From Octopus sinensis (taxonomy: Eukaryota): 64,000 nucleotides of DNA. Location of the stretch: NCBI RefSeq assembly GCF_006345805.1, contig NW_021825323.1, forward strand, positions 62,001 to 126,000, in the 5' to 3' direction. The notes under the pieces are model-generated. The model worked only from the letters and a program-made list of their open reading frames with translations, had not been told where the DNA came from and searched no databases. Below, one piece after another: positions 11,488 through 61,084 of the stretch; position 1 is the stretch's first letter, and every line of letters begins with the position of its first letter. Position numbers and translations under genes: made by a program.

Positions 11488-12053
11488 CACCCCTCGTCAC
11501 CGAAAACCGGACAAGCCATTTTTTATGATTTTATTAATTAAATACAAAAAATCAAAAACGTACGCTTAATATTTTTACTTAATAATAATAATTGTGTATT
11601 AATTATTAATTATGCTATTATAGAACTAATATTTAAAGCAGAATTTCAATTTAGTTATGACATGTAAAACCGGACAAAACTTTTATAGATCTAAAAGTCG
11701 TTGAAAAGAAGCTAAAAATGTATAGTCAAAGAAGAAGTCACCTTTGAGATTTCCTGAAAGAACAAATTATTGCATTTTATAATCATAATATGTCACATGC
11801 CTCAGGGATTACTATGCCCCACTCGTTACCTCCGAATTATTTCTGAGAAATAATTGATTAATGATTTTTCAATTTTTTAGAAAAATTAATAATCAATCAC
11901 AACGACGAACGAACGAACGAAGAATTTTATTGTAAGAAAGAAGAGCGAGACAGAAAATTAGTGCGGAAAGTAATTTTGACGAGACGATTGCTTTGGGCAT
12001 TCGAGCTCTTCCATGGTTCGTCCGCTTTGTCTGTCTATGAGCAGGGACACCTG

Positions 12054-14650
12054 CTATTCTCCACGATCGATGAATAGGTCAGTTACTTTAGAGCGTTTCC
12101 GAAAAGTTCGGATAGAAGCCTCGATGGCCTGCCGTAGCTCTGGAGACTTGCTCTCCGCCCAGCTTGGGACAGGCTCCCATGGATTTAGCATATAGGCTAG
12201 TTTTAGAGCGTATCTCCGTATTTTTTCGCATTTTCGCAGAATTTTCTCATATTGTTTCGAGTAGAACCAAGCTTCCATACCATACAGTAGGCTGGGCAAG
12301 ATTGTTGCATGGTATACAAATAGGAAGGTATTTGGATTCAAGTGCATGCTTCTTAGGAGTCGGAGAGCGGCGATGGCTTTCCCTTTTCTCCGTTTGAAAT
12401 GCAAATGGTATCTCGAGTTTGCGTCGATTGTGAGCCCCAGGTAACGTATGCTCTCAGGGCGAGCAATTTCCACCAAAGAGCCGGGTTTGCGATCTTGCGA
12501 CTTTCTTGGGTTAATTTGGAGATATGCAGATTTGTCCATGGCCAGCGAGAGTCGCTTACCAATGCACCAATTCTTTATCTCCTCAATGTAGCCGGCAAGT
12601 CGTTTCTCCGAGGCATTGGTGTCCATCGAGGTGTCCAGAACGAGAACATCGTCCGCGTAGAGGAGTAGGGATGTCCTGGGATCGGAGGGTGTGGGGAAAC
12701 TGCTCATTACCAAATTGAAAAAGATTGGGCTGAGACAGGACCCCTGCGGAACCCCCCTTCGGAGCGAAATATATCTTGAGAAGAAGCCCGACTCAGAGAT
12801 AAAAGAGTAGCGATTTGAGAGGAAGCAGCGCATCCAGAGGAAGACTTCCGCTGTTGGCTCACAGAGTTCGATCCTTTCCAGGAGGTCTCTGTGCCAGACG
12901 CTGTCAAAAGCCTTTGAGATGTCCAGACATACAAGAGATAAAGTTTCTTTAAACTCCGTTGCTCTCGAGATGGTGGACTGTACCGTAATGAAACAGTCAC
13001 CGCAGCTACGTCCAGAGCGAAAACCCCATTGCTGCGGGAGCAGCACTTTCTTCTCTTCGGCGTGGAAGTCGAGGCGCTTGGCCATAATTTTCTCCATCAG
13101 CCTTGAGATAGTTGGGATTAGGCTTATGGGACGGTAGCTGCTAGCGAGATTCACCGGTTTCGCAGGCTTTTTGATCATCCGGACCTCTGAGATTTTCCAT
13201 TTTTCCGGCACATGGCCCCATTTGAGACTTGCCGTAAACAGATCCGCGAGGAACACATGTAGGTCTTCGGGTGCTTCCTTAAACAATCGCATCGGTATTT
13301 TGTCATGGCCCGGTGCGTTGCCTTTTGACGAACGGATGGCCCAGGTCACCTCTGCAATGGTGATCGGGTGATGGTCCGGCGACAGTGGGCGCGGCAGTGG
13401 CTCCGACTCCCGGTTTTGCGACGTTTCCGGATTGGCCTCCTGGATAGTGGCCAGGTGTTCTGCAAATATGTTTGGCATCTCTTGTGGCGAGGCGGGCATA
13501 CCAGACTGGTTGCACAACCTCGGGGGAGGATTTTCCTTCGAGGTTAGCCACTTTGTGGAAACAGTCCCAGAAATTTGGGTTTCTGTAGTCCAGGTTTTGA
13601 CAAGCCTTCTGCCATTTCCTGGCTGCTTCCAGCTTTGTCGCGACGTGGACCTTATAACCAATTTCCGAGATCATGTTCCTAAGTCTTCCCCTGTCAGCTG
13701 GGTCCACACAGCGTTTGAGTTTATTTCTCAGCCGCTTCCTTTCGTTGAGGATGATCTTCACTTTCACGCTCAGAGTGGTCCTCCGTGCGCGGTCTGCACT
13801 TGACAATTCTCCGTACGACGTTAGATACTGAAGCATGAATTTGCTTAGCTTATCGCTTGCGGAGTCGATGTCGAGGGCTGAGTTATACCCAACAGGGCGA
13901 CCGTTGTCGTGCAGGAATGCACTTATGGAGCTCCTGTAGTGTGGCCAGTTGATCTTTGAGAGATTGTAGTGAGAGGAAATGTGTTCTTGTCTAACAATGC
14001 TAGTGTGAATTTTGATCTCCATTGGTAGGTGGTCACTTCCGATATCGTCAAGGACTGTAGGCTTTTCCATAAGGTTAGCGACAGAGTGAGAACAGATGCA
14101 CAGGCACAGGTTGTCCCCGCCAAAGGGCGAGTGGTGGTTCGGGTCTTCGGATGTCCTGACGAAAACACCAAGCTTGTCAGTGACCTTCTTCAGTGTTCGA
14201 CCATCTTGGTTGGTTAACCGACATCCAAACGCCGTGTGCTTCGAGTTTAAGTCTCCGATAAGAAGGCAATGAGCTGTGCTTGAGAAGAATTCGTCAATCA
14301 ATCTGATGCAGGGGGGGAGATATTTGCAATATATTCCACCGACCTTTATCCAGAAGGAATCAGTTTTCACCTCAAGAGAGAGGAATTCGCACACCGTGCT
14401 CTCGATGATGGTGAGGTTACGGATTTGGAGGTTTTCGGCGTAGAAGATGCTCGAGCCAGTCCCTGGCGTAGAGCAGCTTCCCCATTTTAGGTCCACTGAC
14501 CGGTAGCCCGGAAGTTCGTACGAGTGGTTTTCTTTGAGCTTAGACTCGTTGACGACAATAATGTCTGGATGGCCGCTGTTTACCATCTCAACGAAGTCCT
14601 GGTGCCGTCTCTTGATAGATCGGGCATTCACAGCGATGATTTTGACTGGG
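12054..14650 (-). pseudogene. LINE A ORF2 (APE endonuclease plus RT), one frameshift near 13540
   Basis: IVVNESK, GDLNSKH, GSDHLP; YRPISL, QWGFR, DISKAFD, GVPQG, YADD. Confidence 0.92.
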
Positions 14651-14697
14651 GCTATGTTGCTGGCGTGCTCCCCTCTAATAGGAGCCGTTGCAGCACC

Positions 14698-15954
14698 TCA
14701 GGTTCCACACCAAGTTTGGTTAGAGCTCCCACACAACGATGAAAGAATTCCATAAGGGAGTCTCTGTTGTGCAGGTCTTCGTCCGAGAGGGCACCTCTTT
14801 GCGATGAGATATTGTCTGGAGGGGTGTTTCTTCTTGCGAGCAGCAGCCGTGCGGCCAGCTCTGGTACTGGAACAAGTGTCAGCCGTCGGCTTCGGGTCGA
14901 GTTTAAAATCAAAGTCGGAGTCCGCCGATGTCTGAATGCAGACATCAGTCTTGATCGGATTCACAACTGGCCTCTTTGTCCAGATCGACTCTGTGCGTTC
15001 GGCTTTCACCCAGCGAGCTGGGTTGCTGGCCGGCGGATTTCTCACAGCCCGTAAGGCTGCAGACGCGGCTTTGGCGAATGGGCATCCACCGTAACATGCC
15101 CAGTGTCCAGGACTGTTGCAGTTTATGCAGGTCTTGACAGCAGGGTCATTTGGTCTGGGGTCTGAGTTCGGACACCTATTGTGTCGGTGTTCGCCACCAC
15201 AGACCAAGCAACGAACTTTTTCGGTGCACTTATGGGACGTGTGTCCAAATTGGTGACACCGAAAGCATCTGACTGCCGGGGGCTTGTGCCATTCACATCG
15301 GATATGGCTGAAGCCCGCAGTTATTCCAAAGCGGATGAGGGTGTTGGCCTCTGCTCTGGAATCCAGGGTGAGTCTGCCGACAGGCATGTCTGTTCCATTG
15401 CGAGAGAATCTTTCGAACTTGAAGTCCGATTCTAGACTTTCTCTCAAGTGGAGGTTAAGATCCTCTGTCGAGATCCAATGAGGGATTCCTTTAAGGATCA
15501 AGACTGAGGCCTTCTCAGCTATTGAGGCAAGTTTATGGCCGCCTTCGCCAAACATATTCGATTGAGTCAGCTCTGCTTTGAACGCAGCAGCATCCTCGGG
15601 CGATCTGAATTTTAGAATGAAGGTGCCGGACTTCTGCAAAGTTATCCGAGCTTTGGAGGCAGTTAGCGACTTGGATAGGAGGTTAAACCTCTTGATCTTT
15701 CCAAGCGTCGGGTTTTCAATACTCAAGGAATATGTGAGGGTCTCATGGGATTGGGTCTCACTCTGTTTTTGGGGCCCAGTAGGCTTCGGCAGTTCTGTGG
15801 GATCCTCAGCTTTGATTGGTTCACAAAAGGGCTGTGGCTTTGCCGCTGTTCGTCTTTGAGCTTTGGCGCAAGCTTTGATTGATGAGAGATTTTGATTATT
15901 CTTGACCATTTTTTCTTTCTTTTCCTTGACCATGATATTCAATCCGATATTCAA
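14698..15954 (-). CDS. LINE A ORF1, gag-like nucleic-acid-binding protein
   Basis: Three zinc knuckles: CFRCHQFGHTSHKC, CLVCGGEHRHNRC, CINCNSPGHWACYGGC. Confidence 0.88.
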   Translation of the reverse strand: MNIGLNIMVKEKKEKMVKNNQNLSSIKACAKAQRRTAAKPQPFCEPIKAEDPTELPKPTGPQKQSETQSHETLTYSLSIENPTLGKIKRFNLLSKSLTASKARITLQKSGTFILKFRSPEDAAAFKAELTQSNMFGEGGHKLASIAEKASVLILKGIPHWISTEDLNLHLRESLESDFKFERFSRNGTDMPVGRLTLDSRAEANTLIRFGITAGFSHIRCEWHKPPAVRCFRCHQFGHTSHKCTEKVRCLVCGGEHRHNRCPNSDPRPNDPAVKTCINCNSPGHWACYGGCPFAKAASAALRAVRNPPASNPARWVKAERTESIWTKRPVVNPIKTDVCIQTSADSDFDFKLDPKPTADTCSSTRAGRTAAARKKKHPSRQYLIAKRCPLGRRPAQQRLPYGILSSLCGSSNQTWCGT

Positions 15955-16421
15955 TCCGATATTCGATATTTTTTTTTTTCATCACAACGACATAAAATTC
16001 AACCTATATATTAGGTTAATTAGAGTACAATTTAATGATATACTAAAAGATGCTTTAAAACAAATAAATTAAAATAATATTTTTATACAACAAACCATTT
16101 TGACTGATAAGCACATTAAAACATATTTTAAAAATGTGAATTGTGTGAAACGCTTTAAAGGCACATAATTTGATAGTTTTATAATTAACTCTAACCAGTT
16201 TTTAGTTTTATTTAAAACATTTTTTGAAATGTAAAAAGATAAAGGTTTAAAATCATCTGTAGATCTCTTATAAAAAACTCAAACTTTATCCAGTTTTTTA
16301 GTTTAAAATCATATATAGATCTGAAGTTTAAAACGAAAAATTAAATTTGTCCTTTTTTTGATTCTTTTCATGTGAACATCTTTGTATCTCCATTCGAAAA
16401 TTCTACTTTAAATTTTTTCAA

Positions 16422-16672
16422 ACCCTAAACCCAACCAATTCCCTAACCTTCACCCTAACCCTAACCTTCACCCCCAAACCCTAACCTTCACCCAACCCTA
16501 ACCTTCACCCAAACCCTAACCTTCACCAACCTAACCTTCACCCAAACCCTAACTAACCTTCACCCAAACCCTAACCTTCACCCAAACCCTAACCTTCACC
16601 CAAACCCTAACCTTCACCCAAACCTAACCTTCACCCTAACCCTAACCCTAACCTATACCCTAACCATAACCA
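16422..16672. repeat. Degenerate telomere-like (CCCTAA)n array with an ~18-bp higher-order unit
   Basis: Repeats of CCCAAACCCTAACCTTCA and CCCTAA, internal to G3. Confidence 0.9.
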
Positions 16673-17739
16673 TGAGATAAAACAGCATGCTTAATTTATT
16701 GTTTTTTAATGATAATGGTTAAGCATTGAAAAAATAAAAATCCATAATATTATTAATTTTTAAATTAATAAGTAAATATATTTCAATCATTTAAATATTT
16801 TAAATTGAAATTTTAAAAATTTAGAGCAATGGTAACGAGCGGGGCATGGTAACGAACAGGGCATGTGACATAATATGACTTATCGAATGATTTCTGCAAG
16901 TATAGGAGTCCCAAAATCAACTGTATCAGATGTGATTCAGAAATTCAAAAAAACTGGATCAATTAACAGACATCCGGGAACTGAAAGAAAGAAAATATTG
17001 AAAGAGGAAGAAATTTTAATTTTAGTAGAACTATCAAATAATACCCCCAATAAAAGTGTCAAAACTCTTAGCATCGAAATTAAAACTATGTTCAAAAAAA
17101 AATTTCAACAAGAATAGTATCTCGAATTTTAAATAAGAAAGGATTATATGGCCGAGCTGCTAAAAGAAAACCTCTTTTATCCACAAAAACTATAATTTTA
17201 AGACGTGAAATTACGAAATCATTTTTAAGCATTTCCGACAAGACATGGAAGTTGGTAATTTTTACTGATGAATGGTCTTTTGATATTTTTAATACCAATA
17301 AGCATCAAATAGTGTATATAGAAAATGGTTCTGCATACAAAAAATGCAATATTATCCCAACTGTAAAATTCGGTGGTGGAAAAATAATGGTCTGGGGCAG
17401 TTTCTCATATAACGGAGTCGGTAATCTTGTTTTTATTGACGGAATTCTTAATAGCGCAAAATATATTAATATTTTATCCAATAATATATTCGAATGTGCC
17501 AAAAAATTCGGGATAGACTCATTTATTTTACTACAGGATAATGGACCTTGCCACAGATCTAAAATGGTGCAAGATTATATTAAAGAAAAAAACATTATTT
17601 TACTTCAATGGCCGGCTCAATCACCGGATCTAAACCCCATAGAACATCTATGGGCAGAAATGAAGAGAAAATTATCAAAAAATGTAGTTCAAAAACAAAA
17701 ATGAGCTAAAGGACAAATTAACAGAAATATGGAATAATA

Positions 17740-18428
17740 TGTCACATGGGCGACTATGTCGCTATGGGCAGCCAGTCCTTTTACGTGTTTCTATGGAAAC
17801 CGCAGAAAAGGTATTAAATATTGACGGGATATTCCCGGAGGATATGAATGCTCGAAGCAAACACCGGTTGGTCAAAAAGGCTTCCAATTTTTGTCAAAAT
17901 GTCTGAAGAATCGTCATTTAATTTCGAGTTAGGGTTTGAGTTAAGGTTAGGGTTAGATTTTGAATATTTATGTTGTCACTCTGCCAACGTTAGGGTTTGG
18001 GTTAAGGTTAGGGTTTGATTTTGAATATTTATGTTGTCACTCTGCCAACGTTAGGGTTAGGGTTAGATTTTGAATATTTATGTTGTCACTCTGCCAACGT
18101 TAGGGTTTGGGTTAAGGTTAGAGTTAAAGTTGTTACAAACTTTGCAAAAAATTTGATGTAAATTATAATTTGCTAATGTTGCAATTTATATTATCAAAAA
18201 TAAAAATAATTCACATTATAATTTGCTAATGTTGTAAATAATTTTACTATTTTAAAGCAAGCATGGTTCAAATATAAAACATCATTTTCTCAAAAATTTA
18301 AAGTTCAATCATTAGTTCAGATCGCTTGCCTTTTATTACTCGGCCTTTTAGTAAATATTTGCTATGTAGTTTCCATGGAAACACGTAAAGGCCAGGTTGC
18401 CCATAGGGGTCTGATCACCCATGTGACA
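17740..18428. mobile_element. Ginger-like MITE G4 with internal TTAGGG-containing tandem repeats
   Basis: TGTCACATGGG...CCCATGTGACA; TSD TAATA; three 49-61-bp units containing TTAGGG (about 17929-18125). Confidence 0.88.
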
Positions 18429-18517
18429 TAATATATCACCAGAATTATTGAAAAAACTAGTAATGTCTATGAAAAATAGATGTTACAAAATTTTCAGTGC
18501 AAATGGTGGACATATTA

Positions 18518-19713
18518 TGTCGCGTCCCACACGAGCTACCCATCCCATGGTAGTTACATGTCACCTGTCAATAAATAATAATGCCTGTCAAATTTAATAA
18601 TTAATTTAATTCCATTGATTTCTAATCAATAATCGTTTCAACAATAAAAATTTATTAAAATAAAGCGTCTACGTTTTTTTAACTTGATTCATATTAACTA
18701 TTTTAGACTTCCCTGAACTTGTTTTAATCTGTTAAATAAAATAATAATAAAATAGACCTCTAGTCGATTGTTTGACAAAATTTGAACAAATTCAGCAGGT
18801 TCTCCATATGGGGATTCAAATCGGTTTAGCCTTAGGGAAGGATTTGTCCCAAAATCCTTTAGAACTCTAACCTAACAATTATTCACTAAAAATATTCCGC
18901 TCCCAATTGAAAAATCGTATTTCGATTGATGAACATTCATTTTTTATTCATGCGTTTAAAATATGGTGAATTTAAATTAGGTGGAGAAAAATTCAATATA
19001 AAATCACTAGCATCCAAGTTGTCTAGCATATGTTATTCAAAATTTACCTGAAACATCTAAAATATTTTCTACATCCATATCCTCTGATGATACATGATAA
19101 AAATCATCCGAACACTCACTTTCTTTGAAATTAAAAAAATTTTTATCATCATGAATGACGGTGTTTATACCAGAAACTCCTTTTAGTTTTTTAAATGGTG
19201 TTTCATTTATAGAAGAATGAATAGTCGTGTTATATGTAAAAGTGCTTCGTTTAATAAATTGGATCCAGTTTTTAGTTGATTCTTCACTCATCAGCTTTGA
19301 AAGATTTCGTGTTAAAGTTTGATTAAATCTTTCCACGATACCCTGAAACAGATAAATATTGTGTCATTACTTGTGATTGAGGATGATTTGGTCTTCCGTA
19401 AATATGTTGAATTTATATTTTATTTGTCTTGAAGATGTCTGTACAGGTTGGCCATTTAAAATATTGACTATAGTATGATATTCTGAGATATTTTTTACAA
19501 AACCTATTATTACATATACAGGGGAAAACATTTTAAAGAGGACATGTTGAAAATTGAATAATAACGCTAAAAATATTAAATATGCCCACACGAGTAACGA
19601 ATGATTAAACCACATTAATTATGACATCTGACAGCCAATGACCTCGTAAAAATGATTTATTGACAGGTGACATGTAGCCAGCATGGGATGCGTAACCACC
19701 ACGGGACGCGACA
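18518..19713 (-). mobile_element. Ginger-like element G5 with the 3' half of an integrase
   Basis: TGTCGCGTCCC...GGGACGCGACA; TSD TATTA; SQ/GIVERFNQTLTR with a 28-nt intron at 19343-19370. Confidence 0.88.
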
Positions 19714-20095
19714 TATTATGTCACATGCCCTGTTCGTTACCATGCCCCGCTCGTTACCATTGCTCTAAATTTTTAAAATTTCAATTTAAAATATTTAAAT
19801 GATTGAAATATATTTACTTATTAATTTAAAAATTAATTTTAAACCTTTATCTTTTTACATTTCAAAAAATGTTTTAAATAAAACTAAAAACTGGTTAGAG
19901 TTAATTATAAAACTATCAAATTATGTGCCTTTAAAGCGTTTCACACAATTCACATTTTTAAAATATGTTTTAATGTGCTTATCAGTCAAAATGGTTTGTT
20001 GTATAAAAATATTATTTTAATTTATTTGTTTTAAAGCATCTTTTAGTATATCATTAAATTGTACTCTAATTAACCTAATATATAGGTTGAATTTT

Positions 20096-21181
20096 ATGTC
20101 GTTTCTCGTATCAAAGATGAGGAGGGGTCACACTCCTCTCAAGTCTCTGAACAATCCAAACTGTACTGAGTCTCTTGTCCTCTCGCTGCAGATAAAAAAT
20201 TATGCGATTGGACGAATAAAGTCCTTTAATATTCTAACCAAATCCGAGACTGCACAGAAGGCCCGAATTACTGCCAGGAAGTCTGGGGACTTTACCCTCG
20301 AATTCTCAAATTCTAGTGACAGGGACTCGTTTGTGAATGACTTCGAGTATAACAAACCATTTGGCCAGGACGGCCATTATATTTCTGCGTGCAGTCTGCA
20401 ACCATCGACCGTAGTCTTGAAGGGAATACCATCTTGGGTCTCCGAGGAAGACCTGGATCTTTACCTCAAAGAAATTCTCAACCCCGGTTTTACTTTCCAA
20501 CGGTTCTACAAAAATGGACGGAGTGTACCTGTTGGAAAGTTGAGTCTGAATTCGAGGGCAGAAGCCACTTCGCTTGTAAGGATGGGAATCGAAGTGGGAT
20601 TTCAAAAAATACGATGCGAATGGTTTAAAAACCCAGCAACAAGATGCTTTCGCTGCCAACAATTTGGTCACATTGCTAACTTCTGCAAAGAAGTGGAAAG
20701 ATGTCTTTTCTGTGGTGGTGATCATAATATGAAAATGTGCCCGATTAAAGGAAAAACTGAGAAAAAATGTATAAACTGCGGTCTGAGTGGGCATTTGGCT
20801 TGCTACGGTGGCTGCTCTTCAGCTAAGGCAGCCACTGAACAACTAAAAAAGCAGCTCAGTGCCAGGGACAGACTGGCCAAAGCAGAACACTCAAAAACTG
20901 TATGGTCAAAAGCGGAGGCCGTTGAATCTGTATGGCGAAAACCCACAATTTCCCGCTGTTTTGACTCCTCAACGCAAACAGATGTTAGTGAAGACGCAAC
21001 TTTGCCTCCCAATACACAACACACAGAGCCTCCAACCCGCTTTAAGAGGAAAGCACCAACTATCGACGTTGAGCTTACCTCTATGATTCGCAAAATAATC
21101 GCTATATGCGATGAAAAAGGCCTCGATATCAACAATCTGTTGTCCCTTTCTCTTGGAAGGGAAAGGATTGATCAGGCGTGA
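20096..21181 (+). CDS. LINE B ORF1, gag-like protein with three zinc knuckles
   Basis: CFRCQQFGHIANFC, CLFCGGDHNMKMC, CINCGLSGHLACYGGC; aligns by eye with LINE A ORF1. Confidence 0.88.
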   Translation: MSFLVSKMRRGHTPLKSLNNPNCTESLVLSLQIKNYAIGRIKSFNILTKSETAQKARITARKSGDFTLEFSNSSDRDSFVNDFEYNKPFGQDGHYISACSLQPSTVVLKGIPSWVSEEDLDLYLKEILNPGFTFQRFYKNGRSVPVGKLSLNSRAEATSLVRMGIEVGFQKIRCEWFKNPATRCFRCQQFGHIANFCKEVERCLFCGGDHNMKMCPIKGKTEKKCINCGLSGHLACYGGCSSAKAATEQLKKQLSARDRLAKAEHSKTVWSKAEAVESVWRKPTISRCFDSSTQTDVSEDATLPPNTQHTEPPTRFKRKAPTIDVELTSMIRKIIAICDEKGLDINNLLSLSLGRERIDQA

Positions 21182-23971
21182 GCCCCTTTCTGTCTATTAT
21201 CGCTGTGAACGCACGTTCTCTAAAGAGAAGGCGTTCAGAGATTGAGGATATGTTATCCCATAACCCCGTGGACCTTTTGATCGTAAACGAAACAAAAATC
21301 AAAAAACATGATGATTACTACTTGGATGGCTATCGTTCCCTTGATATTAAGTGGAAGCCGGGCTCGATCGCTGGAACAGGCACTTCTATCTACTACAAAT
21401 CAACTCTAAGGGTGAAAAATCTAAAAATTGTGTCCGAGGAATTGTGTGAATTCCTCACAATCGACGTCCTTCTGGAAAAAGGGTGGGTAACAATCGGAGG
21501 GATGTACTCAAAATCCCTTTCCAATTACTCATCGCTTATCAAGGACTTTTTTGCCGATAAACACAATCATTTGTCAATACTCCTCGGGGATCTAAATGCC
21601 AAATGCACATCTTTTGGCTGTCTGAGAACCAACAGGGATGGCATCATTCTTAAGAAGCTTTCAGAATCTCTCAGTTTCTCGGTCATCACATCAAAAACCC
21701 CAAATCATTACTCACCAGGAGGGTGGGACTATTTGGGCGTAGCATTGGTCTCTATGTCTACTCTTCAATTTATGGAACAACCGTACACCTTAAATGATAT
21801 TGGAAGTGACCATCTACCAATTTTATACAAACTCAACCTTGGACCTTTAAAGGGTAAACCAACTTTTATACGATATAACCTCTCGACTATAAACTGGGAA
21901 CACTACCGAAAATGTTTTACACTTTATCTGAGCAATTTCGCTCCTAAACTTGACGAAAATTCTTCATCTGAGGACCTCGAGAAGTCTAGCAATTCCCTTA
22001 TTGGATACATAAAGTCTTATCTGGAAACATATTCTACAAAAATCGTCTCAAACAATAGGAAAACTCACATGCCAAACATGAATGTTGAAATCCTACTAAG
22101 GAAAAAACAATGTCTAAGGAACAAACTCCGGCGCTGCGCAGATTTTCGTGACCGGTCCGTTTTGGAAAGTGAAATCTTCACCATTACGGAAGAAATAAGA
22201 AAATCGGCGAAGGTGGCGAAGGATAAAAAATGGAATACTGAGTGCAAAAAGCTACATAAAGGAAGTCCAAATTTTTGGAAGGTCTACTCGAAATTAACCT
22301 CGACGTCTGAGAAAACTATACCTAAACTGCTAAAACAAGATGGATCCCCTGCATCTCATGAAGAAATCCCGAACATATTTGCTGATAGTCTCAAAAGAAT
22401 ACAAGAAGTCAATCCGGATACAAATCTATCTGATTCAGCTTTGTTTGATATGGAAAAAGAGTTGGAAGACAATCTTAGCTCATTACCAATGTGCTCGGAA
22501 TCTATAACGTGCAAAGACGTGGAAAATGCAGTTAGATACTCCAAAAATAACGCTCCGGGAAAGGACAAGATAACCATGCGCATGTTCAAAGAAGCTCCCA
22601 AGCAACTTTACGAATATTTGGGATGTCTCTTCTCCCGCAGTGTGAGCTTGGGATACGTCCCTTCTTCATGGAAACTGACGGAGGTAAGGATGATACGGAA
22701 GCCTGGAAAACCTGGTTACTTGGCGACAAGTTATAGGCCTATAAGCCTAATTCCTACCATCAGTCGAATAATGGAAAGGGTAATGTTTGAACGACTCTCT
22801 GAACACGTCGAGAGAAATGGTTATCTCAAAGACGTGCAGTGGGGCTTTCGGAGGGGTCGTTCCTGTGCTGACTGTCTTTATACACTCAATTCGTCGATTG
22901 TAAAGGCTCTGGATTTCAAAGAGTGTCTGACAATTGTGTCTCTAGACATCTCAAAAGCCTTTGATATGGTTTGGCACCTCGGTCTCCTTAGACATCTGGC
23001 GAAGTGTCACATAGACAAAGGACTATTCCTATGGCTAAAAGACTTCCTCCGCGACAGGCGCTCTGTGATAAGCTTTCTGAACTATGACTCGGATGAACTG
23101 AAACTTAAAAGAGGCGTCCCTCAAGGATCAGTCCTCAGTCCTCTATTATTCAACATTGTGATGAGCAATCTGCCGTCTCCTGTCAACACACGGACGGAAA
23201 TTTTGATATACGCCGATGATGTTGTAATCCTTGACATTTCATCGAAACCTGCCTTATCCGAACAAAGGATTATATCATATATGAATACAGTGGAGCAATG
23301 GTGCGATGAAAATATGTTCATTATTGCGCGTGAGAAGTCCGCATTACTGAGAATCACAGAAAGCAGAAATTTAATAAATTTACCGTGCCTGATCAAGAAC
23401 ATACCTCGACAAAACTCAATTAAATATCTTGGCTTGTTCATCGATGAAAAGGAAACTATCTCGAAAACGCAAAATTAAGTAAAAGGAAAGCAACTAATGC
23501 TCTGTTCTGCCTGAGGAAGTTAAATTTGGAGCCTGATACTTTCCTCTACGTTTTCAATACGGTGATCCTACCGGGACTACTATACGGAAAAGAGGGATGG
23601 TACTTCTCTAAAAAGAAGGACACCATCTTAACTAAATTTGAAAAGTCTCGCAGGCTCGCTTTGAAGCTTGCTTACCACCAAAAAGTTGAAGATCCAATCC
23701 CCCTGTGGCTTGAAAGTAAATCCTCCATGGTCGGTGAAACTGTCGAAAAAGCTATAAGTGGTTATAAATCCAACTCAATTGTCACTGGGACGTACCTGCA
23801 GAGGTAGAAAAGAAAAAAAAAAAAAAAAAAAAAAATTTACTTGAGAGGGTCTCTTTTTTTTTTCTGGGAAGAAGTCGATAGGGTAGTCCTATTGTTTCAT
23901 TATACAAACTCCCCCCTAACCTTTAACCCTTCTCTGTTTCCAATAAAACTTCCTATTCCTATTTCTCTCTC
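20104..23971 (+). mobile_element. APE-type LINE B (Jockey/I-like), divergent from LINE A
   Basis: TSD TCGTT (20099-20103, 23972-23976); AATAAAA and a CT-rich tail. Confidence 0.92.
21178..23807 (+). pseudogene. LINE B ORF2 (APE plus RT), frameshift near 23450
   Basis: 766-aa ORF with GDLNAK, GSDHLP, YRPISL, GVPQGS, YADD; C-terminus in ORF 23526-23807; overlaps the ORF1 stop (GTGA). Confidence 0.92.
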
Positions 23972-24146
23972 TCGTTGTGATTGATTATTAATTTTTCTAA
24001 AAAATTGAAAAATCATTAATCAATTATTTCTCAGAAATAATTCGGAGGTAACGATTGGGGCATAGTAATCTCTGAGGCATGTGACATAATAGCATAATTA
24101 ATAATTATTACACAATTATTATTATTTTTTTCCGGTTTTACATGTC

Positions 24147-45866: not shown

Positions 45867-47405
45867 TGTCGCGAGCGCAGCGCGCGACCGAGCGCTAGAC
45901 GCGACTTTGACAGCTAACAAGCCTGTCATCAACAAATATATTTATTAAATTATTTAAAATTTTAACATGATTTAAAATTAAAATTGAAATAACTTAAGTT
46001 TTCCATTGAATCCCATAAAATAATTTATAAGTAGACCTTAATAGAAAAAGTAAAATCAATGAATACTGAACGCTAATTTGGTTTAGGTTGTGAGGGGGGT
46101 AATAATTTGACAGATCTCATTGCTATTTTTTCGTTTTAATCTCTAAAATTAGGTCTTCTAATCAAAAATAAACTGTGCAGACAGGCTTGCTCCTTCAGAA
46201 GATTCTTGTTTTGACATTTTAATAAATTATGAAGCATTTAGATTTTTTCTCATTATTCTAAAATATAAATTATAAATTGTAAAATATTATTTTTATTTAT
46301 GAAATCGGTTTTAAAGCTCATTCTGCTTTGGCATCGATTTTAATTTTTGTGATCGAATATATTTAAACCCAAATACCAGCCCGTGTATTTGTCACATTTC
46401 AAAGGCGTTCGACAGCGTTTGGCACCTAGGCCTCCTGGAAAGGATCATCAGTATCCATCCGGGGCAAAGGACTGTCAAATGGCTAGAGAATTTCTTACAC
46501 ATGCGAAAGTCTTTTATCAGATGTGGTAACCGGACCTCGGATACAATCAATCTAAGGAGGGGAGTGCCTCAAGGGTCGGTCCTGAGCCCTCTACTTTTCA
46601 ACTTATACGTTGCCGACATCCCGAAACCAGTAAATCCGGAGAGTCTACTAATCATCTATGCGGACGACATATTGGTTACGGATCTGTCGCGATCCAAGGA
46701 CCTCTCTTGGAAAAGGCTGAGGGAATATATAGCGAGGGTTGAGTCTTGGGCTACGGAGAAAGCCCTCTCCTTAGCACGAGACAAGTCCACCATCACGTGG
46801 GTTTCTAAAACTCGGAAAGGAAGAGAACCACTTCTGGAGACAATGGGACTAAGAATCTCTGACGACCTAAGCTACCTTGGGGTAACGATCGGGGCTGACG
46901 GATCGTTCCTTAAGTTCGTGGAATCTAGAAGAAGGAAATGTTCCGGGATCCTGAGAAGCCTTATACGCTTCCATCTCTCCCCAGACACCTTTCTCTTCAT
47001 CTATAAGGCGACTGTAGAACCAGTCCTTATCTATGGACATGAAGGTTGGTACCCTACAGACGAGAGAAATCGCATAATCACCAAACTGGAGAAAACAAGG
47101 CGCTTTGCGATTAAACTGGCGTATAAGCTACGGCTTGATCAGGATCTCCCCAGAGAGCTAGACGAACAAACTCAAAACATTCGGCAAGTCCTCTGCTCAT
47201 TGCAAAGGGCATGAGAAGTGAAAAGGAAAGCAAGGAGGAGGCTTTCGGTGTCTCGATTTTAATAAAACCTTTTCATATAACTCTTCTCTTTCGGTTGCTA
47301 AGTCAATAAAATCTGTTCGTTCGTTCGTTCGTGTATTTGTCAATTTATAGATTTGTTGATTGATCGGATCTAGAAATTGAGTGGTCGCTCGCTGCGCTCG
47401 CGACA
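45867..47405 (+). mobile_element. Non-autonomous Ginger-like element G7 (family Y) carrying a truncated LINE C
   Basis: TGTCGCGAGCGCAGCG TIRs; TSD TAATA; interior nearly identical to G8; ends similar to G1. Confidence 0.9.
46395..47329 (+). mobile_element. 5'-truncated LINE C (3' half of RT)
   Basis: GVPQGS, YADD; (TTCG)n tail; 13-bp TSD CGTGTATTTGTCA. Confidence 0.9.
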
Positions 47406-55895: not shown

Positions 55896-56366
55896 TGTCA
55901 CAGGCGCTACCGGTTACCGAGCGCTAGACGCGACTTTGACACCTAACAAGCCTGTCATCAACAAATATATCTATTAAATTATTTAAAATTTTAACATGAT
56001 TTAAAATTAAAATAACTTAAGTTTTCCATTGAATCCCATAAAATAATTTATAAATAGACCTTAATAGAAAAAGTAAAATCAATGAATACTGAACGCTAAT
56101 TTGGTTTAGGTTGTGAGGGGGGTAATAATTTGACAGATCTCATTGGTATTTCTCGTTTCAATCTGTAAAATTAGGTCTTCTAATCAAAAATGAACTGTGC
56201 AGACAGGCTTGCTCCTTCAGAAGATTCTTGTTTTGACATTTAAATAAATTATGAAGCATTTAGATTTTTTCTCATTATTCTAAAATATCAATTATAAATT
56301 TTAAAATATTATTTTTATTTATGAAATCGGTTTTAAAGCACATTCTGCTTTGACATTGATTTTAAT

Positions 56367-58196
56367 TAGAGTCACTCATACATCGGGCAGCAGTTCACAC
56401 GACAAAACAAATTGAAAGTCTGGACCAGCTCGTTAGGAATCTTATCAACACTTCTTTGGAGAAGTTCTCCAGGAAAAAGTTCATTAAACACTCTGGTGGA
56501 GGGACTCATGAACTCGACGACACAGTAGTGAGTCTCCTGAAAGAAAAGGCAAGATACCAGAAGAGGCTACGCAGATGTTTTGACCCAACAGACTGCACAC
56601 GCCTACGAGCAATGATTTCCTCTCTTAAAAAGAGGATCGACAAAAGGTCTAAAGAAAACATTGACTCAGCTTGGAGATTGGAATGTTCTAAGCTTAATCG
56701 AAGACACCCAAGTTTCTGGAAGGCATATAATCGCCTAAAGGAAACGGAATGCAAAGGAGATGAAATCAATTTAACCACAGAAAATGGCTATGCTATCAAC
56801 CGAGACGATGTACCTGACGCTTTACGTCAACAACTGGCGAAAATTCAAGATGTCGACCCGAGCTGTTTGGTCCCGACAGATATAATGGACGATAAAAAGA
56901 GGGCAATAGCCTCTGCGAAAATGTCCCCTGGTCGACTTTGTCACGCAATCACCCTGGATGAAACCCTACTAGCAATTAAAAGATGCAAGGACAACGCACC
57001 GGGTTTTGATTACATACCCATCCGAGTCTTCAAAGAGGCCCCGATAAGCCTAGTCAAGATAATAACGATACTTTTCAATGCCAGTTGGGAGACTGGATAC
57101 GTCCCGAATGCATGGAAAAAAACCGTGGTACGAATGATTCCAAAGGCAGGGAAACCTAAAGACCGTGCAGAAAATTTCCGACCCATAAGTCTCATCTGCT
57201 CCATATCAAGAATCATGGAACGTATAATCTTTAAAAGATTATCTATTCTCGTGGAGGAGTCAGGTTACCTGGCTAAAGAACAATGGGGTTTCCGACGTGG
57301 GAAGTCCTGTGGAAACTGCTTTGCCCAACTGGAAACGCAAATCTCGAGGGCCCTTACACACAAGATGGGGATGACAGGACTTCCCACGTCGGAAACCCCA
57401 TTGTTCTTTAGCCAGGTAACCTGACTCCTCCACGAGAATAGATAATCTGTTAAAGATTATACGTTCCATGATTCTTGATATGGAGCAGATGAGACTTATG
57501 GGTCGGAAATTTTCTGCACGGTCTTTAGGTTTCCCTGCCTTTGGAATCATTCGTACCACGGTTTTCTTCCATGCATTCGGGACGTATCCAGTCTCCCAAC
57601 TGGCATTGAAAAGTATCGTTATTATCTTGATTAGGCTTATCGGGGCCTCTTTGAAAACTCGGATGGGTATGTAATCAAAACCCGGTGCGTTGTCCTTGCA
57701 TCTTTTAATTGCTAGTAGGGTTTCATCCAGGGTGATTGCGTGACAAAGTCGACCAGGGGACATTTTCGCAGAGGCTATTGCCCTCTTTTTATCGGAAGAA
57801 GGAAATGTTCCGGGATCCTGAGAAGCCTTATACGCTTCCATCTCTCCCCAGACACCTTTCTCTTCATCTATAAGGCGACTGTAGAACCAGTCCTTATCTA
57901 TGGACATGAAGGTTGGTACCCTACAGACGAGAGAAATCGCATAATCACCAAACTGGAGAAAACAAGGCGCTTTGCGATTAAACTGGCGTATAAGCTACGG
58001 CTTGATCAGGATCTCCCCAGAGAGCTAGACGAACAAACTCAAAGCATTCGGCAAGTCCTCTGCTCATTGCAAAGGACATGAGAAGTGAAAAGGAAGCAAG
58101 GAGGAGGCTTTCGGTGTCTCGATTTTAATAAAACCTTTTCATATAACTCTTCTCTTTCGGTTGCTAAGTCAATAAAATCTGTTCGTTCGTTCGTTC
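56367..58196 (+). mobile_element. LINE C-type fragment with an internal 421-bp foldback
   Basis: ORF 56456-57424; 57374-57794 is the inverse of 56890-57310; 3' end identical in type to LINE C with a (TTCG)n tail. Confidence 0.85.
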
Positions 58197-58203
58197 GGGT
58201 ATT

Positions 58204-59663
58204 AATACACGGATGCAATCAAATTAGCAATACACGGATGCAATCAAATTAGCAATACACGGATGTAAAAATAAATCCCCTGGTTGGGACTACATACCGA
58301 TGATTATCTTCAAAAAGGCGGGAATGCCTTTGTTGTACGAACTATGGAAGTTATTTAACTTTTCGTGGAGTATTGGACATGTTCCCCAAGCATGGAAGAG
58401 GACAATTGTTCGCATGATCCCGAAGAAAGGAAAACCGAGTTCGGATCCTGCAAATTACAGACCAATCACCCTCATATGTTCTATCTCAAAAATCATGGAA
58501 AAAATTGTCTTTAAAAGACCATCAACTTATATTGAAGATAAACAGTATCTCTTGAAAGAGCAATGGGGTTTTCGGCGGAACAAGGGCACTGGAAATTGCT
58601 TTTCACTGTTAAAGGAGGCCATATCTACAGCACAAAGGAAAAAAGAGTATCTTACGGCTGCATGTCTAGACATATCAAAAGCATTTGATAGCGTCTGGCA
58701 TGCCGGGCTATTACGAACTTTATACAATTTTAACGTTGGAAAGACAGCCCTAGTTTGGATGAAGAGTTTCCTCTCGGAAAGAGAATCGTTTGTACGGGTC
58801 GGTAACCAATTATCGAAGAGAATTTTGCTTAAGAGAGGAGTTCCGCAGGGATCTGTCATCAGTCCACTTTTATTTAACTGTGTGATGTGCGACATCCCTC
58901 AAGTGGATCTCCCTAGCATGGAGATGGTCATCTACGCAGATGATATTTTAATTATGGATTTCTCTATGAGCAAATCAATATCGTGGAAAAGAACCCATAG
59001 TTATATCGAAAAAATTGGCAAATGGTGCAGGATAAAGGCTTGTCTTTATCTTTTGAAAAAAGCACTGTTTGCTGGATTGTTGGAAGGAGAAGGAAACCTG
59101 ATGTTTGTATTAACACCGGAGCGATAAAACCCGTGGATGATCTTAAATACCTCGGAATAGTTGTGGATGCAACTGGTTCATTCAAGATGTATATAAGGAA
59201 GAGAAAGAACAAGGCTACCCAAATGTTGAAAGCTCTGATGCGATTCCAGCTGAAACCGGAAACGTTCTTATACGTATACTCTGCGTGTATAGAACCCTTC
59301 CTGATCTATGGATCTCAAGGATGGTTCGGAAGCTGCGAAGGAAAGAAACATATTGATCTTTTGGAGAAAACGCGGAGATATGCCATTAAACTGGCACATG
59401 GCTTGGACTTAAAATCCAAACTAACCCCAGAGCTGGAGGGATCGGTACGATTTATTGAAAAACTGTTGCATCACTTAAATAAATAGTGGTGCAAGGGGTC
59501 ATTATTTTTATCGAAGGGACATCTGGTGTCCCATTAGAGTTGACCCCAATCAGCAAACAAACTTGGTTCTTCCGTCTCCTTGGTTTCGTTTGGCTCTTCT
59601 CTCCCCCTTTTAATCTAGTGACGAGTTTGTTACATAGAAAATAAACAGTTCAATTCAATTCCT
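58204..59663 (+). mobile_element. 5'-truncated LINE D (distinct family)
   Basis: RT ORFs 58300-59127 and 59022-59486; TSD GGGTATT; 25-bp tandem duplication at the 5' junction. Confidence 0.88.
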
Positions 59664-59675
59664 GGGTATTTGTCA

Positions 59676-60643
59676 GCTGTTTGTCTGGAAATTTCAAAGG
59701 CGTTCGACAGCGTTTGGCACCTAGGCCTCCTGGAAAGGATCATCAGTATCCATCCGGGGCAAAGGACTGTCAAATGGCTAGAGAATTTCTTACACATGCG
59801 AAAGTCTTTTATCAGATGTGGTAACCGGACCTCGGATACAATCAATCTAAGGAGGGGAGTGCCTCAAGGGTCTGTCCTGAGCCCTCTACTTTTCAACTTA
59901 TACGTTGCCGACATCCCGAAACCAGTAAATTGGAGAGTCTACTAATTATCTATGCGGACGACATATTGGTTACGGATCTGTCGCGATCCAAGGACCTCTC
60001 TTGGAAAAGGCTGAGGGAATATATAGCGAGGGTTGAGTCTTGGGCTACGGAGAAAGCCCTCTCCTTAGCACGAGACAAGTCCACCATCACGTGGGTTTCT
60101 AAAACTCGGAAAGGAAGAGAATCACTTCTGGAGACAATGGGACTAAGAATCTCTGACGACCTACGCTACCTTGGGGTAACGATCGGGGCTGACGGATCGT
60201 TCCTTAAGTTCGTGGAATCTAGAAGAAGGAAATGTTCCGGGATCCTGAGAAGCCTTATACGCTTCCATCTCTCCCCAGACACCTTTCTCTTCATCTATAA
60301 GGCGACTGTAGAACCAGTCCTTATCTATGGACATGAAGGTTGGACTGTAGAACCAGAACCAGTCCTAATCTACAGACGAGAGAAATCGCATAATCACCAA
60401 ACTGGAGAAAACAAGGCGCTTTGCGATTAAACTGGCGTATAAGCTACGGCTTGATCAGGATCTCCCCAGAGAGCTAGACGAACAAACTCAAAACATTCGG
60501 CAAGTCCTCTGCTCATTGCAAAGGGCATGAGAAGTGAAAAGGAAAGCAAGGAGGAGGCTTCCGGTGTCTCGATTTTAAATAAAACCTTTTCATATAACTC
60601 TTCTCTTTCGGTTGCTAAGTCAATAAAATCTGTTCGTTCGTTC
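59676..60643 (+). mobile_element. 5'-truncated LINE C copy
   Basis: Nearly identical to 46395-47329; TSD GGTATTTGTCA. Confidence 0.9.
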
Positions 60644-61084
60644 GGTATTTGTCAATTTATAAATTTTTTGATTGATCGCATCTAGAAATTGAGTGGTCGC
60701 TCGCTGCGCTCGGTAGTGCCCAGCGCCTGTGACATATTATCCATCTGCAGAAATTATCAGTATTTTATCAAACAATCGCGTTGAGGTAGTTTAAACATTT
60801 AAATTTAATAGATAAAAAATTCGATGAGCGAAATTTCGATTGTGCCAATGTCCAGACTTAAAAAATAATTAACAAGTTATTATTCTTTGAAGTTTAATAC
60901 AAGGTCACGTCAGGTATCACGCGGCCCATAGGTGTCACGCAAACCATGTCACATAATTGTAGATAGAATGAAAACCATTACGTCTAAAGATTGTGTAAGC
61001 TTTATTTCTGGAATACAGGGAAATATTGCCGACACACTAAATATGGTTAACATAAAATTTTAAAAAAAGAATTTTTTGGTGTTA

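What the first reader, a model, noticed from the sequence alone, without database searches (positions are those of the whole stretch)
11791..24086. Two divergent LINE families inserted at the same nucleotide of a Ginger-like MITE
Seen: G3 and G6 are near-identical copies of one non-coding element (2 mismatches in the 115-bp arm; reconstructed empty site GAATTTTATG|TCGTTGTGATTGATT). G3 holds LINE A and G6 holds LINE B. Their proteins are clearly divergent and their tails differ ((TTCG)n versus CT-rich). Both 3' ends join the host directly before TCGTTGTGAT, in the same orientation, with different TSD lengths (10 bp and 5 bp), so these are independent insertions. Known: Xenopus Tx1L/Tx2L insert site-specifically into Tx1D/Tx2D DNA transposons. 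Inference: a Jockey/I-like APE-LINE lineage has evolved specificity for Ginger-type DNA transposons, using them as a multicopy safe harbour and possibly riding along when the MITE is mobilised. I do not know of this pairing being described.
Basis: partly seen in the sequence, partly recalled or inferred. Interest (0 to 1): 0.88.

Follow-up and report, generated by a model that had tools for sequence, protein, structure and literature searches.

The report
Octopus LINEs that target transposon hot spots
In this Octopus sinensis window, two distantly related LINE retrotransposons sit at exactly the same nucleotide of a small DNA-transposon relic, and genome-wide at least five LINE families of one clade use this nucleotide (about seven the clade's hot spots in all), making it a site-specific LINE lineage whose targeting I did not find described.

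Summary
G3 (11791-16870, minus strand) and G6 (19719-24086) are copies of one roughly 0.5-0.9 kb non-coding element. LINE A and LINE B (37-47% amino-acid identity) each end directly before TCGTTGTGAT, with 10-bp and 5-bp duplications.

Genome-wide the site is a true hot spot. I read 27 copies of it: 12 are empty and 15 are occupied, always in one orientation, by five LINE families with unrelated tails. Several copies hold two LINEs in series.

The specificity is not exclusive. The same families also fill a second site (GGGTATTTGTCAATTTATAG) in another transposon relic of the same kind; two filled copies lie in this window. LINE A also recurs just upstream of histone-like genes. About a third of LINE B copies lie elsewhere.

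The host elements have TGTNR ends, inverted terminal repeats and 5-bp TAWTA duplications, which fits Ginger2/Tdd.

The LINEs are closest to the I/Jockey group and furthest from Tx1. They probably correspond to the published "unknown I clade" of O. sinensis, for which that paper's text reports no target site.

Verdict: real, and a new variant of a known kind (site-specific LINEs such as Tx1L in Tx1D). I found no evidence that the LINEs ride along with the host element. Genome searching closed partway through, so the tallies are samples.

The parts
11791..11905 (-). MITE-1 copy G3, right arm (115 bp). It includes the 3' copy of the LINE A duplication, TCGTTGTGAT, at 11896-11905. The element's own 5-bp duplication TAATA lies at 11786-11790 and 16871-16875.
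11906..15980 (-). LINE A, full length or nearly so. Tail (TTCG)4 at 11906-11921. ORF1 (three CCHC knuckles) within 14698-15978. ORF2 has the APE domain at 13303-14697 and RT at 12054-13670, with one frame change near 13510-13598. There is no RNase H and no C-terminal Cys-His motif.
15981..16870 (-). MITE-1 copy G3, left arm. The 5' copy of the duplication TCGTTGTGAT is at 15981-15990. An internal 18-bp satellite rich in TTAGGG-like units lies at about 16400-16670.
19719..20103 (+). MITE-1 copy G6, left arm (internally deleted form). It ends in the 5' copy of the LINE B duplication, TCGTT, at 20099-20103. The flanking 5-bp sequences are TATTA at 19714-19718 and TAATA at 24087-24091 (one mismatch).
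20104..23971 (+). LINE B. The 5' UTR is only 13 nt. ORF1 lies within 20021-21181 and ORF2 (APE + RT) within 21172-23478. The C-terminal part is in another frame at 23448-23807. The tail is TTCCTATTCCTATTTCTCTCTC.
23972..24086 (+). MITE-1 copy G6, right arm, starting with the hot-spot sequence TCGTTGTGATTGATT.
45867..47405 (+). MITE-2 copy. Ends TGTCGCG...CGCGACA, with the 5-bp duplication TAATA on both sides. It holds a 5'-truncated LINE D at 46395-47331 with tail (TTCG)4. The LINE duplication TGTATTTGTCA lies at 46384-46394 and 47332-47342.
55896..60734 (+). Second MITE-2 copy, with the 5-bp duplication TATTA on both sides. Its hot spot was filled several times in series (56367-60645). The block holds, in order: a rearranged LINE with an inverted duplication at 57374-57785; a LINE D 3' end at 57785-58197; LINE E at 58260-59668 with a (TTCAA)n tail; a regenerated target TGGGTATTTGTCA; and LINE D at 59680-60645.
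19037..19713 (-). Remnant of an integrase-bearing element (rve_3 fragment at 19037-19363). Its TGTCGCG-type end (19713) abuts G6 with only the shared 5 bp between them. This is the only link in the window between such ends and an integrase.

Best explanation
The genome is Octopus sinensis. It carries a diversified and recently active clade of APE-type LINEs from the I/Jockey group, with at least seven 3'-UTR families (here A-E, G, H).

Most likely their endonuclease nicks a small set of defined sequences. The main ones are subterminal sites in two families of Ginger2/Tdd-like non-autonomous DNA transposons:
- MITE-1, nicked before TCGTTGTGATT.
- MITE-2, nicked 0-8 nt before TATTTGTCAATTTATAG.

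Insertion is by target-primed reverse transcription. The bottom-strand nick fixes the 3' junction. The second nick falls 5-13 bp downstream, which gives duplications of variable length and regenerates the target, so the same copy can be hit again.

LINE A in G3 and LINE B in G6 are two independent insertions at the MITE-1 hot spot.

What is shown and what is inferred:
- Shown: the recurrent junctions, the single orientation, the duplications, the 5' truncations, the serial insertions and the empty sites.
- Inferred: that the APE domain itself provides the specificity, by analogy with R1Bm, TRAS1 and Tx1L; and that multicopy, dispensable targets act as a safe harbour.
For: Hot spot at MITE-1. 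Of 27 copies read, 12 are empty and 15 are occupied: B x8, A x3, D x2, C x1, E x1. All insertions have the same orientation, and every 3' junction falls within 1 nt of the same position. The tails are unrelated to each other: (TTCG)n, (TTCCTA)n, (TTCCA)n and (TTCAA)n.

Reverse test from the LINE ends:
- LINE A: 5 of 28 readable 3' ends lie at the MITE-1 site and 3 at MITE-2-type sites.
- LINE B: 6 of 30 lie at MITE-1 and 13 of 30 at MITE-2-type sites.

Target abundance. The MITE-1 site occurs 27 times in 2.72 Gb and the MITE-2 site 112 times.

Signs of independent insertion. Duplications of 5, 10, 11 and 12 bp occur at MITE-1 and of 11-13 bp elsewhere, together with different 5' truncation points.

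Serial insertions. A+E, D+B and B+C occur in single MITE-1 copies. D/E/D and B+G occur in MITE-2 copies.

Family diversity. There are seven 3'-UTR families, which show no clear similarity to one another (55-69% in a global alignment), and proteins are 37-55% identical between families. Host arms are 95-100% identical, so the LINE families are much older than the host copies.

Domains: APE and RT.

Precedent that the endonuclease sets the target: PMC1919474 and PMC1950540.
Against: - Specificity is not exclusive. About 10 of 30 LINE B ends and about 5 of 28 LINE A ends lie at sites with no obvious relation, and 11 of 28 LINE A ends lie in a histone-like gene cluster.
- The MITE-1 and MITE-2 sites share only a loose TTGT(C/G)A core, and I found no convincing homology between the two elements. 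One recognition rule covering all targets is therefore not established.
- The tallies are samples, not a census. The search scored only the best 40 matches, loci were capped at 30 per query, and genome access closed.
- Some histone-cluster and C10250 copies are tandem or segmental duplicates, so they overcount events.
- Endonuclease specificity was not tested biochemically.
Confidence: 0.8

Rival explanations
1. Loose motif or local-structure preference. The LINEs recognise only a short degenerate motif (such as TTGT(C/G)A), or the foot of a small palindrome. The Ginger-like relics are simply the most abundant carriers, so there is no real adaptation to DNA transposons.
For: - Non-relic targets contain similar cores: TTGTCGTTAAT (L068), CATTTTGTCAATT (L069), GGTATTTGTAG (L052) and ATGTTGTTTA (L058).
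- In three MITE-type targets (MITE-1, MITE-2 and a MITE-2-like variant, L082), an inverted repeat starts 5-9 nt downstream of the nick. Single-strand folding gives z-scores of -2.0 to -3.1.
- The H2B-like site also carries the small palindrome ACAAATTTTGT 6 nt downstream of the nick (read from the sequence).
Against: - A 6-nt core would occur hundreds of thousands of times in 2.7 Gb. Yet roughly two thirds of sampled LINE B ends fall in two sequences present 27 and 112 times.
- The junction at MITE-1 is fixed to within 1 nt.
- Short palindromes are common in AT-rich DNA, and the z-scores are modest.
Confidence: 0.12
2. Promoter capture. The lineage aims at positions shortly downstream of TATA-type promoters of multicopy units, so that an outside promoter drives the LINE, which has almost no 5' UTR.
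For: - The LINE B 5' UTR is 13 nt and the LINE A 5' UTR about 50 nt.
- TATA-like boxes lie 18-37 bp upstream of the nick in MITE-1 (TATATAGG), MITE-2 (TATATTTAA), the H2B-like gene (TATATAA) and the H3-like gene (TATATAAAA).
- At all four histone-like sites the LINE is in the sense orientation, between the promoter region and the ATG.
Against: - The idea is post hoc and the genome is AT-rich.
- The spacing varies from 18 to 37 bp.
- Several targets have no TATA-like box: L072, L076, L058 and the H2A-like site.
- No expression data are available.
Confidence: 0.06
3. One ancestral LINE insertion into the relic, after which the composite was spread by the DNA transposase or by duplication, and the LINE parts then diverged.
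For: - Two composites on contig C12470 are identical (L013 and L015).
- The histone-cluster and C10250 copies show that duplication does inflate copy numbers.
Against: - L013 and L015 share their outside flanks at 99.7% identity, so they are a segmental duplication and not a transposition.
- Occupied copies differ in family, tail, duplication length and truncation point.
- Host arms are 95-100% identical while the LINE proteins are only 37-55% identical.
- Twelve empty copies exist.
Confidence: 0.02

Closest known systems
Tx1L/Tx2L LINEs inserted in Tx1D/Tx2D DNA transposons of Xenopus laevis
   Same: An APE-type LINE whose copies sit at one defined site inside a multicopy DNA transposon, forming composite elements. 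In Tx1L the endonuclease itself is site-specific (PMC1950540, PMC1919474, PMC6719617).
   Different: - Different superfamily. The octopus RTs score lowest against labelled mollusc Tx1 RTs (35-63 bits) and highest against I/Nimb RTs (98.6-141 bits).
- ORF2 has no C-terminal zinc-finger-like domain.
- Several targets are used, not one.
- At least five families share the site.
- The host transposon is integrase-type (TG..CA ends, 5-bp duplication).
R1-clade site-specific LINEs (R1, TRAS, SART and relatives)
   Same: - An ORF1 with three CCHC knuckles.
- An APE-RT ORF2 without RNase H.
- Strict junctions.
- Repeated insertion into regenerated targets of multicopy sequences.
   Different: - ORF2 lacks the zinc-finger-like C-terminal domain that PMC1919474 describes for R1, TRAS1 and SART1.
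- The host is a cephalopod, whereas the R1-clade examples cited in PMC1919474 are insect elements.
- Tails are short tandem repeats following an AATAAA signal.
- Placement relative to R1 could not be tested here.
'Unknown I clade' of O. sinensis in Martelossi et al. 2023 (PMC10294476)
   Same: The genome is the same: the assembly size is 2,719,151,902 bp in both sources. The published clade is octopus-only and deeply branched, with 11 clusters, and sits beside I-Loa-R1 and Tad1. This matches the diversity and affinities seen here.
   Different: Identity could not be checked, because the held copy of their alignment is cut off before the octopus sequences. The paper reports only a tree position; its main text never uses the term 'site-specific'.
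Keno and Utopia at the same U2 snRNA gene site (PMC4640811)
   Same: Different LINE families use exactly the same target nucleotides in a multicopy sequence, sometimes in tandem.
   Different: There, two unrelated lineages converged on a host gene. Here, related families of one clade share inherited preferences for transposon relics.
Ginger2/Tdd DNA transposons (for the host element)
   Same: TGTNR ends (TGTCA, TGTCG), terminal inverted repeats, AT-rich targets, and a 5-bp duplication as in TDD-4 and TDD-5.
   Different: - Metazoan Ginger2 elements were reported with 4-bp duplications (PMC2836005).
- The inverted repeats here are short and imperfect, about 25-40 bp.
- No autonomous partner was tied to these relics.

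Membership tests
Site-specific ('stringent') APE-type LINE | ORF2 with an APE endonuclease and a reverse transcriptase | tested here: met
   Pfam Exo_endo_phos_2/Exo_endo_phos and RVT_1 are found in both LINE A and LINE B. RVT_1 is found in the LINE D and E copies.
Site-specific ('stringent') APE-type LINE | Independent copies join the same target nucleotide in one orientation, with duplications and 5' truncations | tested here: met
   15 of 27 MITE-1 sites are occupied at the same position (within 1 nt) by five families. Duplications measure 5-13 bp and truncation points vary.
Site-specific ('stringent') APE-type LINE | Copies confined to a single target sequence | tested here: not met
   Both A and B also use the MITE-2-type site. 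A also uses histone-like gene upstream sites. About a third of B ends lie elsewhere.
Site-specific ('stringent') APE-type LINE | The isolated endonuclease nicks the target specifically | not testable with these tools
   This needs a biochemical nicking assay.
Tx1 clade (L1 superfamily) | The RT groups with Tx1 references | tested here: not met
   I ran BLASTP of the A, B and E RTs against labelled mollusc RTs from Data S2 and Table S7 of PMC10294476:
- I/Nimb: 98.6-141 bits.
- L2/CR1: 85-117 bits.
- RTE: 55-81 bits.
- Tx1: 35-63 bits.
Human L1 and R2 RTs score about equally. This is a similarity ranking, not a tree.
Tx1 clade (L1 superfamily) | [quoted passage not shown] | tested here: not met
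   The C-terminal roughly 250 residues of LINE A ORF2 contain two isolated Cys, and those of LINE B contain one. Neither has a Cys-His motif.
R1 clade | ORF1 ending in three CCHC knuckles | tested here: met
   LINE A has CX2CX4HX4C, CX2CX3HX4C and CX2CX4HX6C, and LINE B is equivalent. Pfam zf-CCHC is found in B. That this pattern is typical of the R1, I and Jockey groups is from my own knowledge.
R1 clade | [quoted passage not shown] | tested here: not met
   Absent from both A and B.
R1 clade | The RT groups with R1 references | not testable with these tools
   No R1, LOA, I, Tad1 or Jockey reference sequences were within reach, because the held alignment supplement is cut. An APE profile hits the L1 endonuclease (98 bits) and the TRAS1 endonuclease (84 bits) about equally, and the R1Bm endonuclease weakly (34 bits).
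I/Jockey group, 'unknown I clade' of O. sinensis | Same genome, and an I-superfamily RT affinity without membership of a named clade | tested here: inconclusive
   - The genome size is identical.
- The best labelled matches are I/Nimb.
- The nearest database relatives are APE-RT(-RNase H) proteins, some named 'mobile element jockey'.
- The published clade has 11 deep clusters.
- Sequence identity with those clusters could not be checked.
Ginger2/Tdd DNA transposon (host MITEs) | TGTNR termini, as in Gypsy LTRs | tested here: met
   TGTCA in MITE-1 and TGTCG or TGTCA in MITE-2. The criterion comes from PMC2836005.
Ginger2/Tdd DNA transposon (host MITEs) | 4-bp (metazoan) or 5-bp (TDD-4/5) duplication at AT-rich targets | tested here: met
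   5-bp TAATA, TATTA, TAGTA or TATTT match on both sides in 11 of 12 complete MITE-1 copies and in both MITE-2 copies in the window. The length is the TDD type, not the 4 bp reported for metazoan Ginger2.
Ginger2/Tdd DNA transposon (host MITEs) | Terminal inverted repeats of about 50-180 bp | tested here: inconclusive
   MITE-1 ends match over about 40 bp with mismatches. MITE-2 ends match over about 25 bp. Both are shorter than described.
Ginger2/Tdd DNA transposon (host MITEs) | An autonomous partner encoding a Gypsy-like integrase without RT | tested here: inconclusive
   - An rve_3 fragment lies about 350 bp inside a TGTCGCG-type end at 19037-19713.
- A fuller rve core lies at 54981-55561.
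- These two copies share no nucleotide similarity.
- The integrase found only three short database relatives, with uninformative names.

The most novel reading that the evidence does not exclude
The clade may not read a single DNA word. It may instead home to the start region of TATA-driven multicopy units: the internal promoter region of Ginger-like transposons, and the H2A-, H2B- and H3-like genes. It would insert in the sense orientation so that the captured promoter transcribes a LINE that has almost no 5' UTR of its own. That would be a LINE lineage living off other elements' promoters, comparable in logic to R1 and R2 co-transcription with rRNA but aimed at Pol II promoters.
Probability: 0.1. 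Interest if true: 0.8.

Novelty: new variant of a known kind. Interest (0 to 1): 0.6.

Why it matters

This would add a cephalopod lineage of the I/Jockey group. On the similarity ranking it is furthest from Tx1, so it would have reached the Tx1L-type habit of nesting in DNA transposons independently of Tx1.

It offers several useful features:
- Many diverged families share the same targets, which is a natural series for mapping how an APE endonuclease reads DNA.
- The elements look recently active. Twelve of the 39 LINE A 3'-UTR matches are 100% identical to the window copy, so they may still move.
- The system has two or more unrelated target sequences.

It also gives a probable biological meaning to an 'unknown' LINE clade already noted in O. 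sinensis, a genome reported as about 57% transposable elements.

Tried and rejected
- Tc1/mariner-type TA duplication for the host element. I considered this first and rejected it, because both flanks match over 5 bp, not 2.
- Homology between MITE-1 and MITE-2 at the target. A MAFFT alignment is unconvincing.
- Clade assignment through solved structures. The RT scores L1 and R2 about equally. The APE domain alone finds nothing useful. An APE profile does not separate the L1 endonuclease from the TRAS1 endonuclease.
- Clade assignment through database names. Only generic 'jockey' or 'hypothetical' names came back.
- Reference RTs for R1, LOA, I, Tad1 and Jockey. They are not in the held part of the PMC10294476 alignment. 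Only Nimb, Tx1, L2, CR1 and RTE mollusc sequences could be used.
- Integrase naming as a Ginger2 test. Three hits, none informative.
- Nucleotide link between the two integrase-bearing remnants in the window. None found.
- The look-up of encoding contigs for the Octopus hit P0001. No record.
- Census of what sits upstream of all 112 MITE-2 sites.
- Literature searches for this pairing in octopus or elsewhere. Nothing found. The Christensen 2000 paper on Tx1L was not held.
Full report
**Observation**

The window is G000:C1794:62001-126000 of a 2,719,151,902-bp assembly. That is exactly the size listed for Octopus sinensis GCF_006345805.1 in Table S1 of PMC10294476. The best named relative of LINE B is also an O. 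sinensis protein.

Two copies of one non-coding element lie in inverted orientation: G3 at 11791-16870 (minus strand) and G6 at 19719-24086.
- Their 115-bp right arms differ at 2 positions.
- Their left arms are identical over 380/380 bases, apart from a 500-bp deletion in G6.

LINE A (11906-15980, minus strand) ends in (TTCG)4 and is flanked by TCGTTGTGAT on both sides. LINE B (20104-23971) ends in TTCCTATTCCTATTTCTCTCTC and is flanked by TCGTT. Both 3' ends abut TCGTTGTGATTGATT in the same orientation.

The two LINEs have the same layout: an ORF1 with three CCHC knuckles, then APE and RT domains. They are only 37-47% identical at the protein level. Each window copy has one frame change in ORF2, at different places. 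These could be real mutations or long-read assembly errors.

**Is the site used specifically?**

I searched the 116-bp right arm against the whole genome and read what lies upstream of TCGTTGTGAT in 27 copies.
- Fifteen copies hold a LINE 3' end at the same position (within 1 nt), always in the same orientation.
- The occupants are family B ×8, A ×3, D ×2, C ×1 and E ×1.

The tails are (TTCCTA)n, (TTCG)n, (TTCG)n, (TTCCA)n and (TTCAA)n. Complementarity between tail and target therefore cannot explain the junction for B, C and E.

The 27-base site occurs only 27 times in the genome.

Independence of the events is shown in four ways.
- The duplications differ in length: 5, 10, 11 and 12 bp.
- The tails and the 5' truncation points differ.
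- Single host copies carry two LINEs in series, separated by a regenerated TCGTTGTGATT. Examples are A then E (L031/L014), D then B (L062) and B then C (L081/L004).
- The one pair of identical composites (L013 and L015) has identical outside flanks, so it is a segmental duplication.

**Reverse test**

I searched the 3' UTRs of A and B and read the junctions.

| Location of the 3' end | LINE B (30 read) | LINE A (28 read) |
|---|---|---|
| MITE-1 site | 6 | 5 |
| MITE-2-type site | 13 | 3 |
| Next to another copy of the clade | 1 | 1-2 |
| Upstream of histone-like genes | 0 | 11 |
| 2.5-kb tandem array on C10250 | 0 | 3 |
| Other sites | 10 | about 5 |

- The MITE-2-type site is (CA)TGGGTATTTGTCAATTTATAG and close variants.
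- The histone-like genes are diverged H2B-, H2A- and H3-like genes.

The refuting scenario of 'mostly unrelated sites' does not hold for B, where 19 of 30 ends lie in the two relic sites. For A only 8 of 28 ends lie in relic sites, so A holds up less well. In both cases the specificity is plural rather than single.

The MITE-2 site occurs 112 times. Two occupied copies lie in this window.
- 45867-47405 holds a truncated LINE D with the duplication TGTATTTGTCA.
- 55896-60734 holds a series of LINE pieces: D-like, D, E and D, with a regenerated TGGGTATTTGTCA between E and D.

Families A, B, D and E are each seen in both MITE-1 and MITE-2. The dual preference therefore looks inherited within the clade.

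In all, seven 3'-UTR families show no clear similarity to one another (55-69% in a global alignment). All end in AATAAA(A) followed by a short tandem repeat.

**The host elements**

Complete MITE-1 copies measure about 800-1200 bp. They end in TGTCAC...GTGACA. In 11 of 12 copies they are flanked by matching 5-bp TAATA, TATTA, TAGTA or TATTT. The ends match as imperfect inverted repeats over about 40 bp.

MITE-2 ends in TGTCGCG...CGCGACA (or TGTCACAGG...CCTGTGACA) with 5-bp duplications.

These features fit the Ginger2/Tdd description: TGTNR ends, AT-rich targets, and 5 bp in TDD-4/5 against 4 bp in metazoan Ginger2 (PMC2836005). They do not fit GingerRoot, which makes 6-bp duplications.

The link to an integrase is circumstantial.
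- An rve fragment sits just inside a TGTCGCG-type end that abuts G6.
- A fuller rve core lies at 54981-55561, beside the second MITE-2 copy.
- No autonomous partner was tied to the relics.

I found no convincing alignment between MITE-1 and MITE-2 around the target. The two sites share only a loose TTGT(C/G)A core. In the three MITE-type targets folded (MITE-1, MITE-2 and a MITE-2-like variant, L082), an inverted repeat starts 5-9 nt downstream of the nick, with modest folding z-scores of -2.0 to -3.1.

**Which LINE clade?**

ORF2 has no RNase H and no C-terminal Cys-His motif. PMC1919474 describes such a motif as typical of L1, Tx1L, R1, TRAS1 and SART1.

I compared the A, B and E RTs with labelled mollusc RTs from Data S2 and Table S7 of PMC10294476.

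| Reference group | BLASTP score (bits) |
|---|---|
| I/Nimb | 98.6-141 |
| L2/CR1 | 85-117 |
| RTE | 55-81 |
| Tx1 | 35-63 |

Database relatives are roughly 890-aa APE-RT proteins, some named 'mobile element jockey', and roughly 1250-aa APE-RT-RNase H proteins.

PMC10294476 reports 16 O. sinensis LINEs in an 'unknown I clade' sister to I-Loa-R1 and Tad1. Their tree shows 11 deeply separated clusters. This very probably is the clade seen here. I could not verify it, because the held alignment is cut off before the octopus sequences.

**Mechanism**

The anatomy is that of target-primed reverse transcription: a fixed 3' junction, variable duplications of 5-13 bp, 5' truncations, and re-use of the regenerated target. 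These features are shown.

That the APE domain itself reads the target is inferred from R1Bm, TRAS1 and Tx1L.

A more speculative reading is promoter capture.
- LINE B has a 13-nt 5' UTR.
- TATA-like boxes lie 18-37 bp upstream of the nick in MITE-1, MITE-2 and the H2B- and H3-like genes.
- At all four histone-like sites the LINE is in the sense orientation.

However, the genome is AT-rich, the spacing varies, and several targets have no such box.

**Comparison and verdict**

The closest known system by behaviour is Tx1L/Tx2L in Tx1D/Tx2D. By the similarity ranking the octopus elements are furthest from Tx1, so Tx1-clade membership is unlikely, and the ORF2 zinc-finger feature is not met for either Tx1 or R1.

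Four literature searches found no description of LINEs targeting Ginger-like elements or histone-like genes in cephalopods.

I rate this a real feature and a new variant of a known kind.

**Limits**

- The search scored only the best matches and returned at most 30 loci per query.
All tallies are therefore samples.
- Some histone-cluster and tandem-array copies are duplicates of single events.

Noticed in passing
Loci L032, L036, L040, L041, L043-L045, L048, L056, L058, L060 (contigs C12441, C3805, C9339, C2235, C6330, C12600, C12598): LINE A copies recur in the sense orientation at four positions just upstream of, or at, the ATG of diverged H2B-, H2A- and H3-like genes in a multicopy cluster. 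At the H2A-like gene the 13-bp duplication CAGAGTATAATGT includes the start codon. Some of these copies are probably duplicates created by amplification of the cluster. The histone-like proteins are clearly non-canonical.
   Followed up: partly
window 16400-16670; also L008: MITE-1 carries an internal tandem array of an 18-bp unit (CCCTAACCTTCACCCAAA on the plus strand), which contains the telomere-like TTAGGG motif. The G6 copy has lost it in a 500-bp deletion.
   Followed up: no
window 19706-19725; L005, L006, L028: Ginger-like elements are repeatedly found end to end, with exactly one 5-bp TAWTA between ...GACA and TGTCAC.... This suggests that new copies insert into the duplicated target flanking an existing copy.
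   Followed up: no
L033, L046, L047, L055 (contig C10250, period about 2.5 kb): A tandem array of identically 5'-truncated LINE A copies, each separated by GACATACAAATT. The shared truncation point suggests unequal crossing-over rather than repeated insertion.
   Followed up: no
window 57374-57785: An inverted duplication of LINE RT sequence (the mirror of about 56960-57376) lies inside the serial-insertion block of the second MITE-2 copy. The 5' junction of that block has also lost about 40 bp of the MITE-2 left arm.
   Followed up: partly
window 16876-17704: A Tc1/mariner-type transposase remnant (DDE_3, HTH_Tnp_Tc3_2) starts directly at the outer edge of G3.
   Followed up: no
window 29267-33901, 49991-52976, 4279-5520, 53648-54433, 38318-39037: Other content of the window:
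- two LINEs with a PHD-finger ORF1 plus RT;
- a MULE transposase;
- an ISXO2/IS1595-like transposase fragment;
- a CNOT11-like open frame that may be a host exon.
   Followed up: no
L064, L058: Two further LINE 3' ends abut MITE-2-type sites: 'G' with a (CTTGT)n-like tail, and 'H' ending in ...CTTTACAATAAAAA. The clade is therefore larger than the five families seen at MITE-1.
   Followed up: partly
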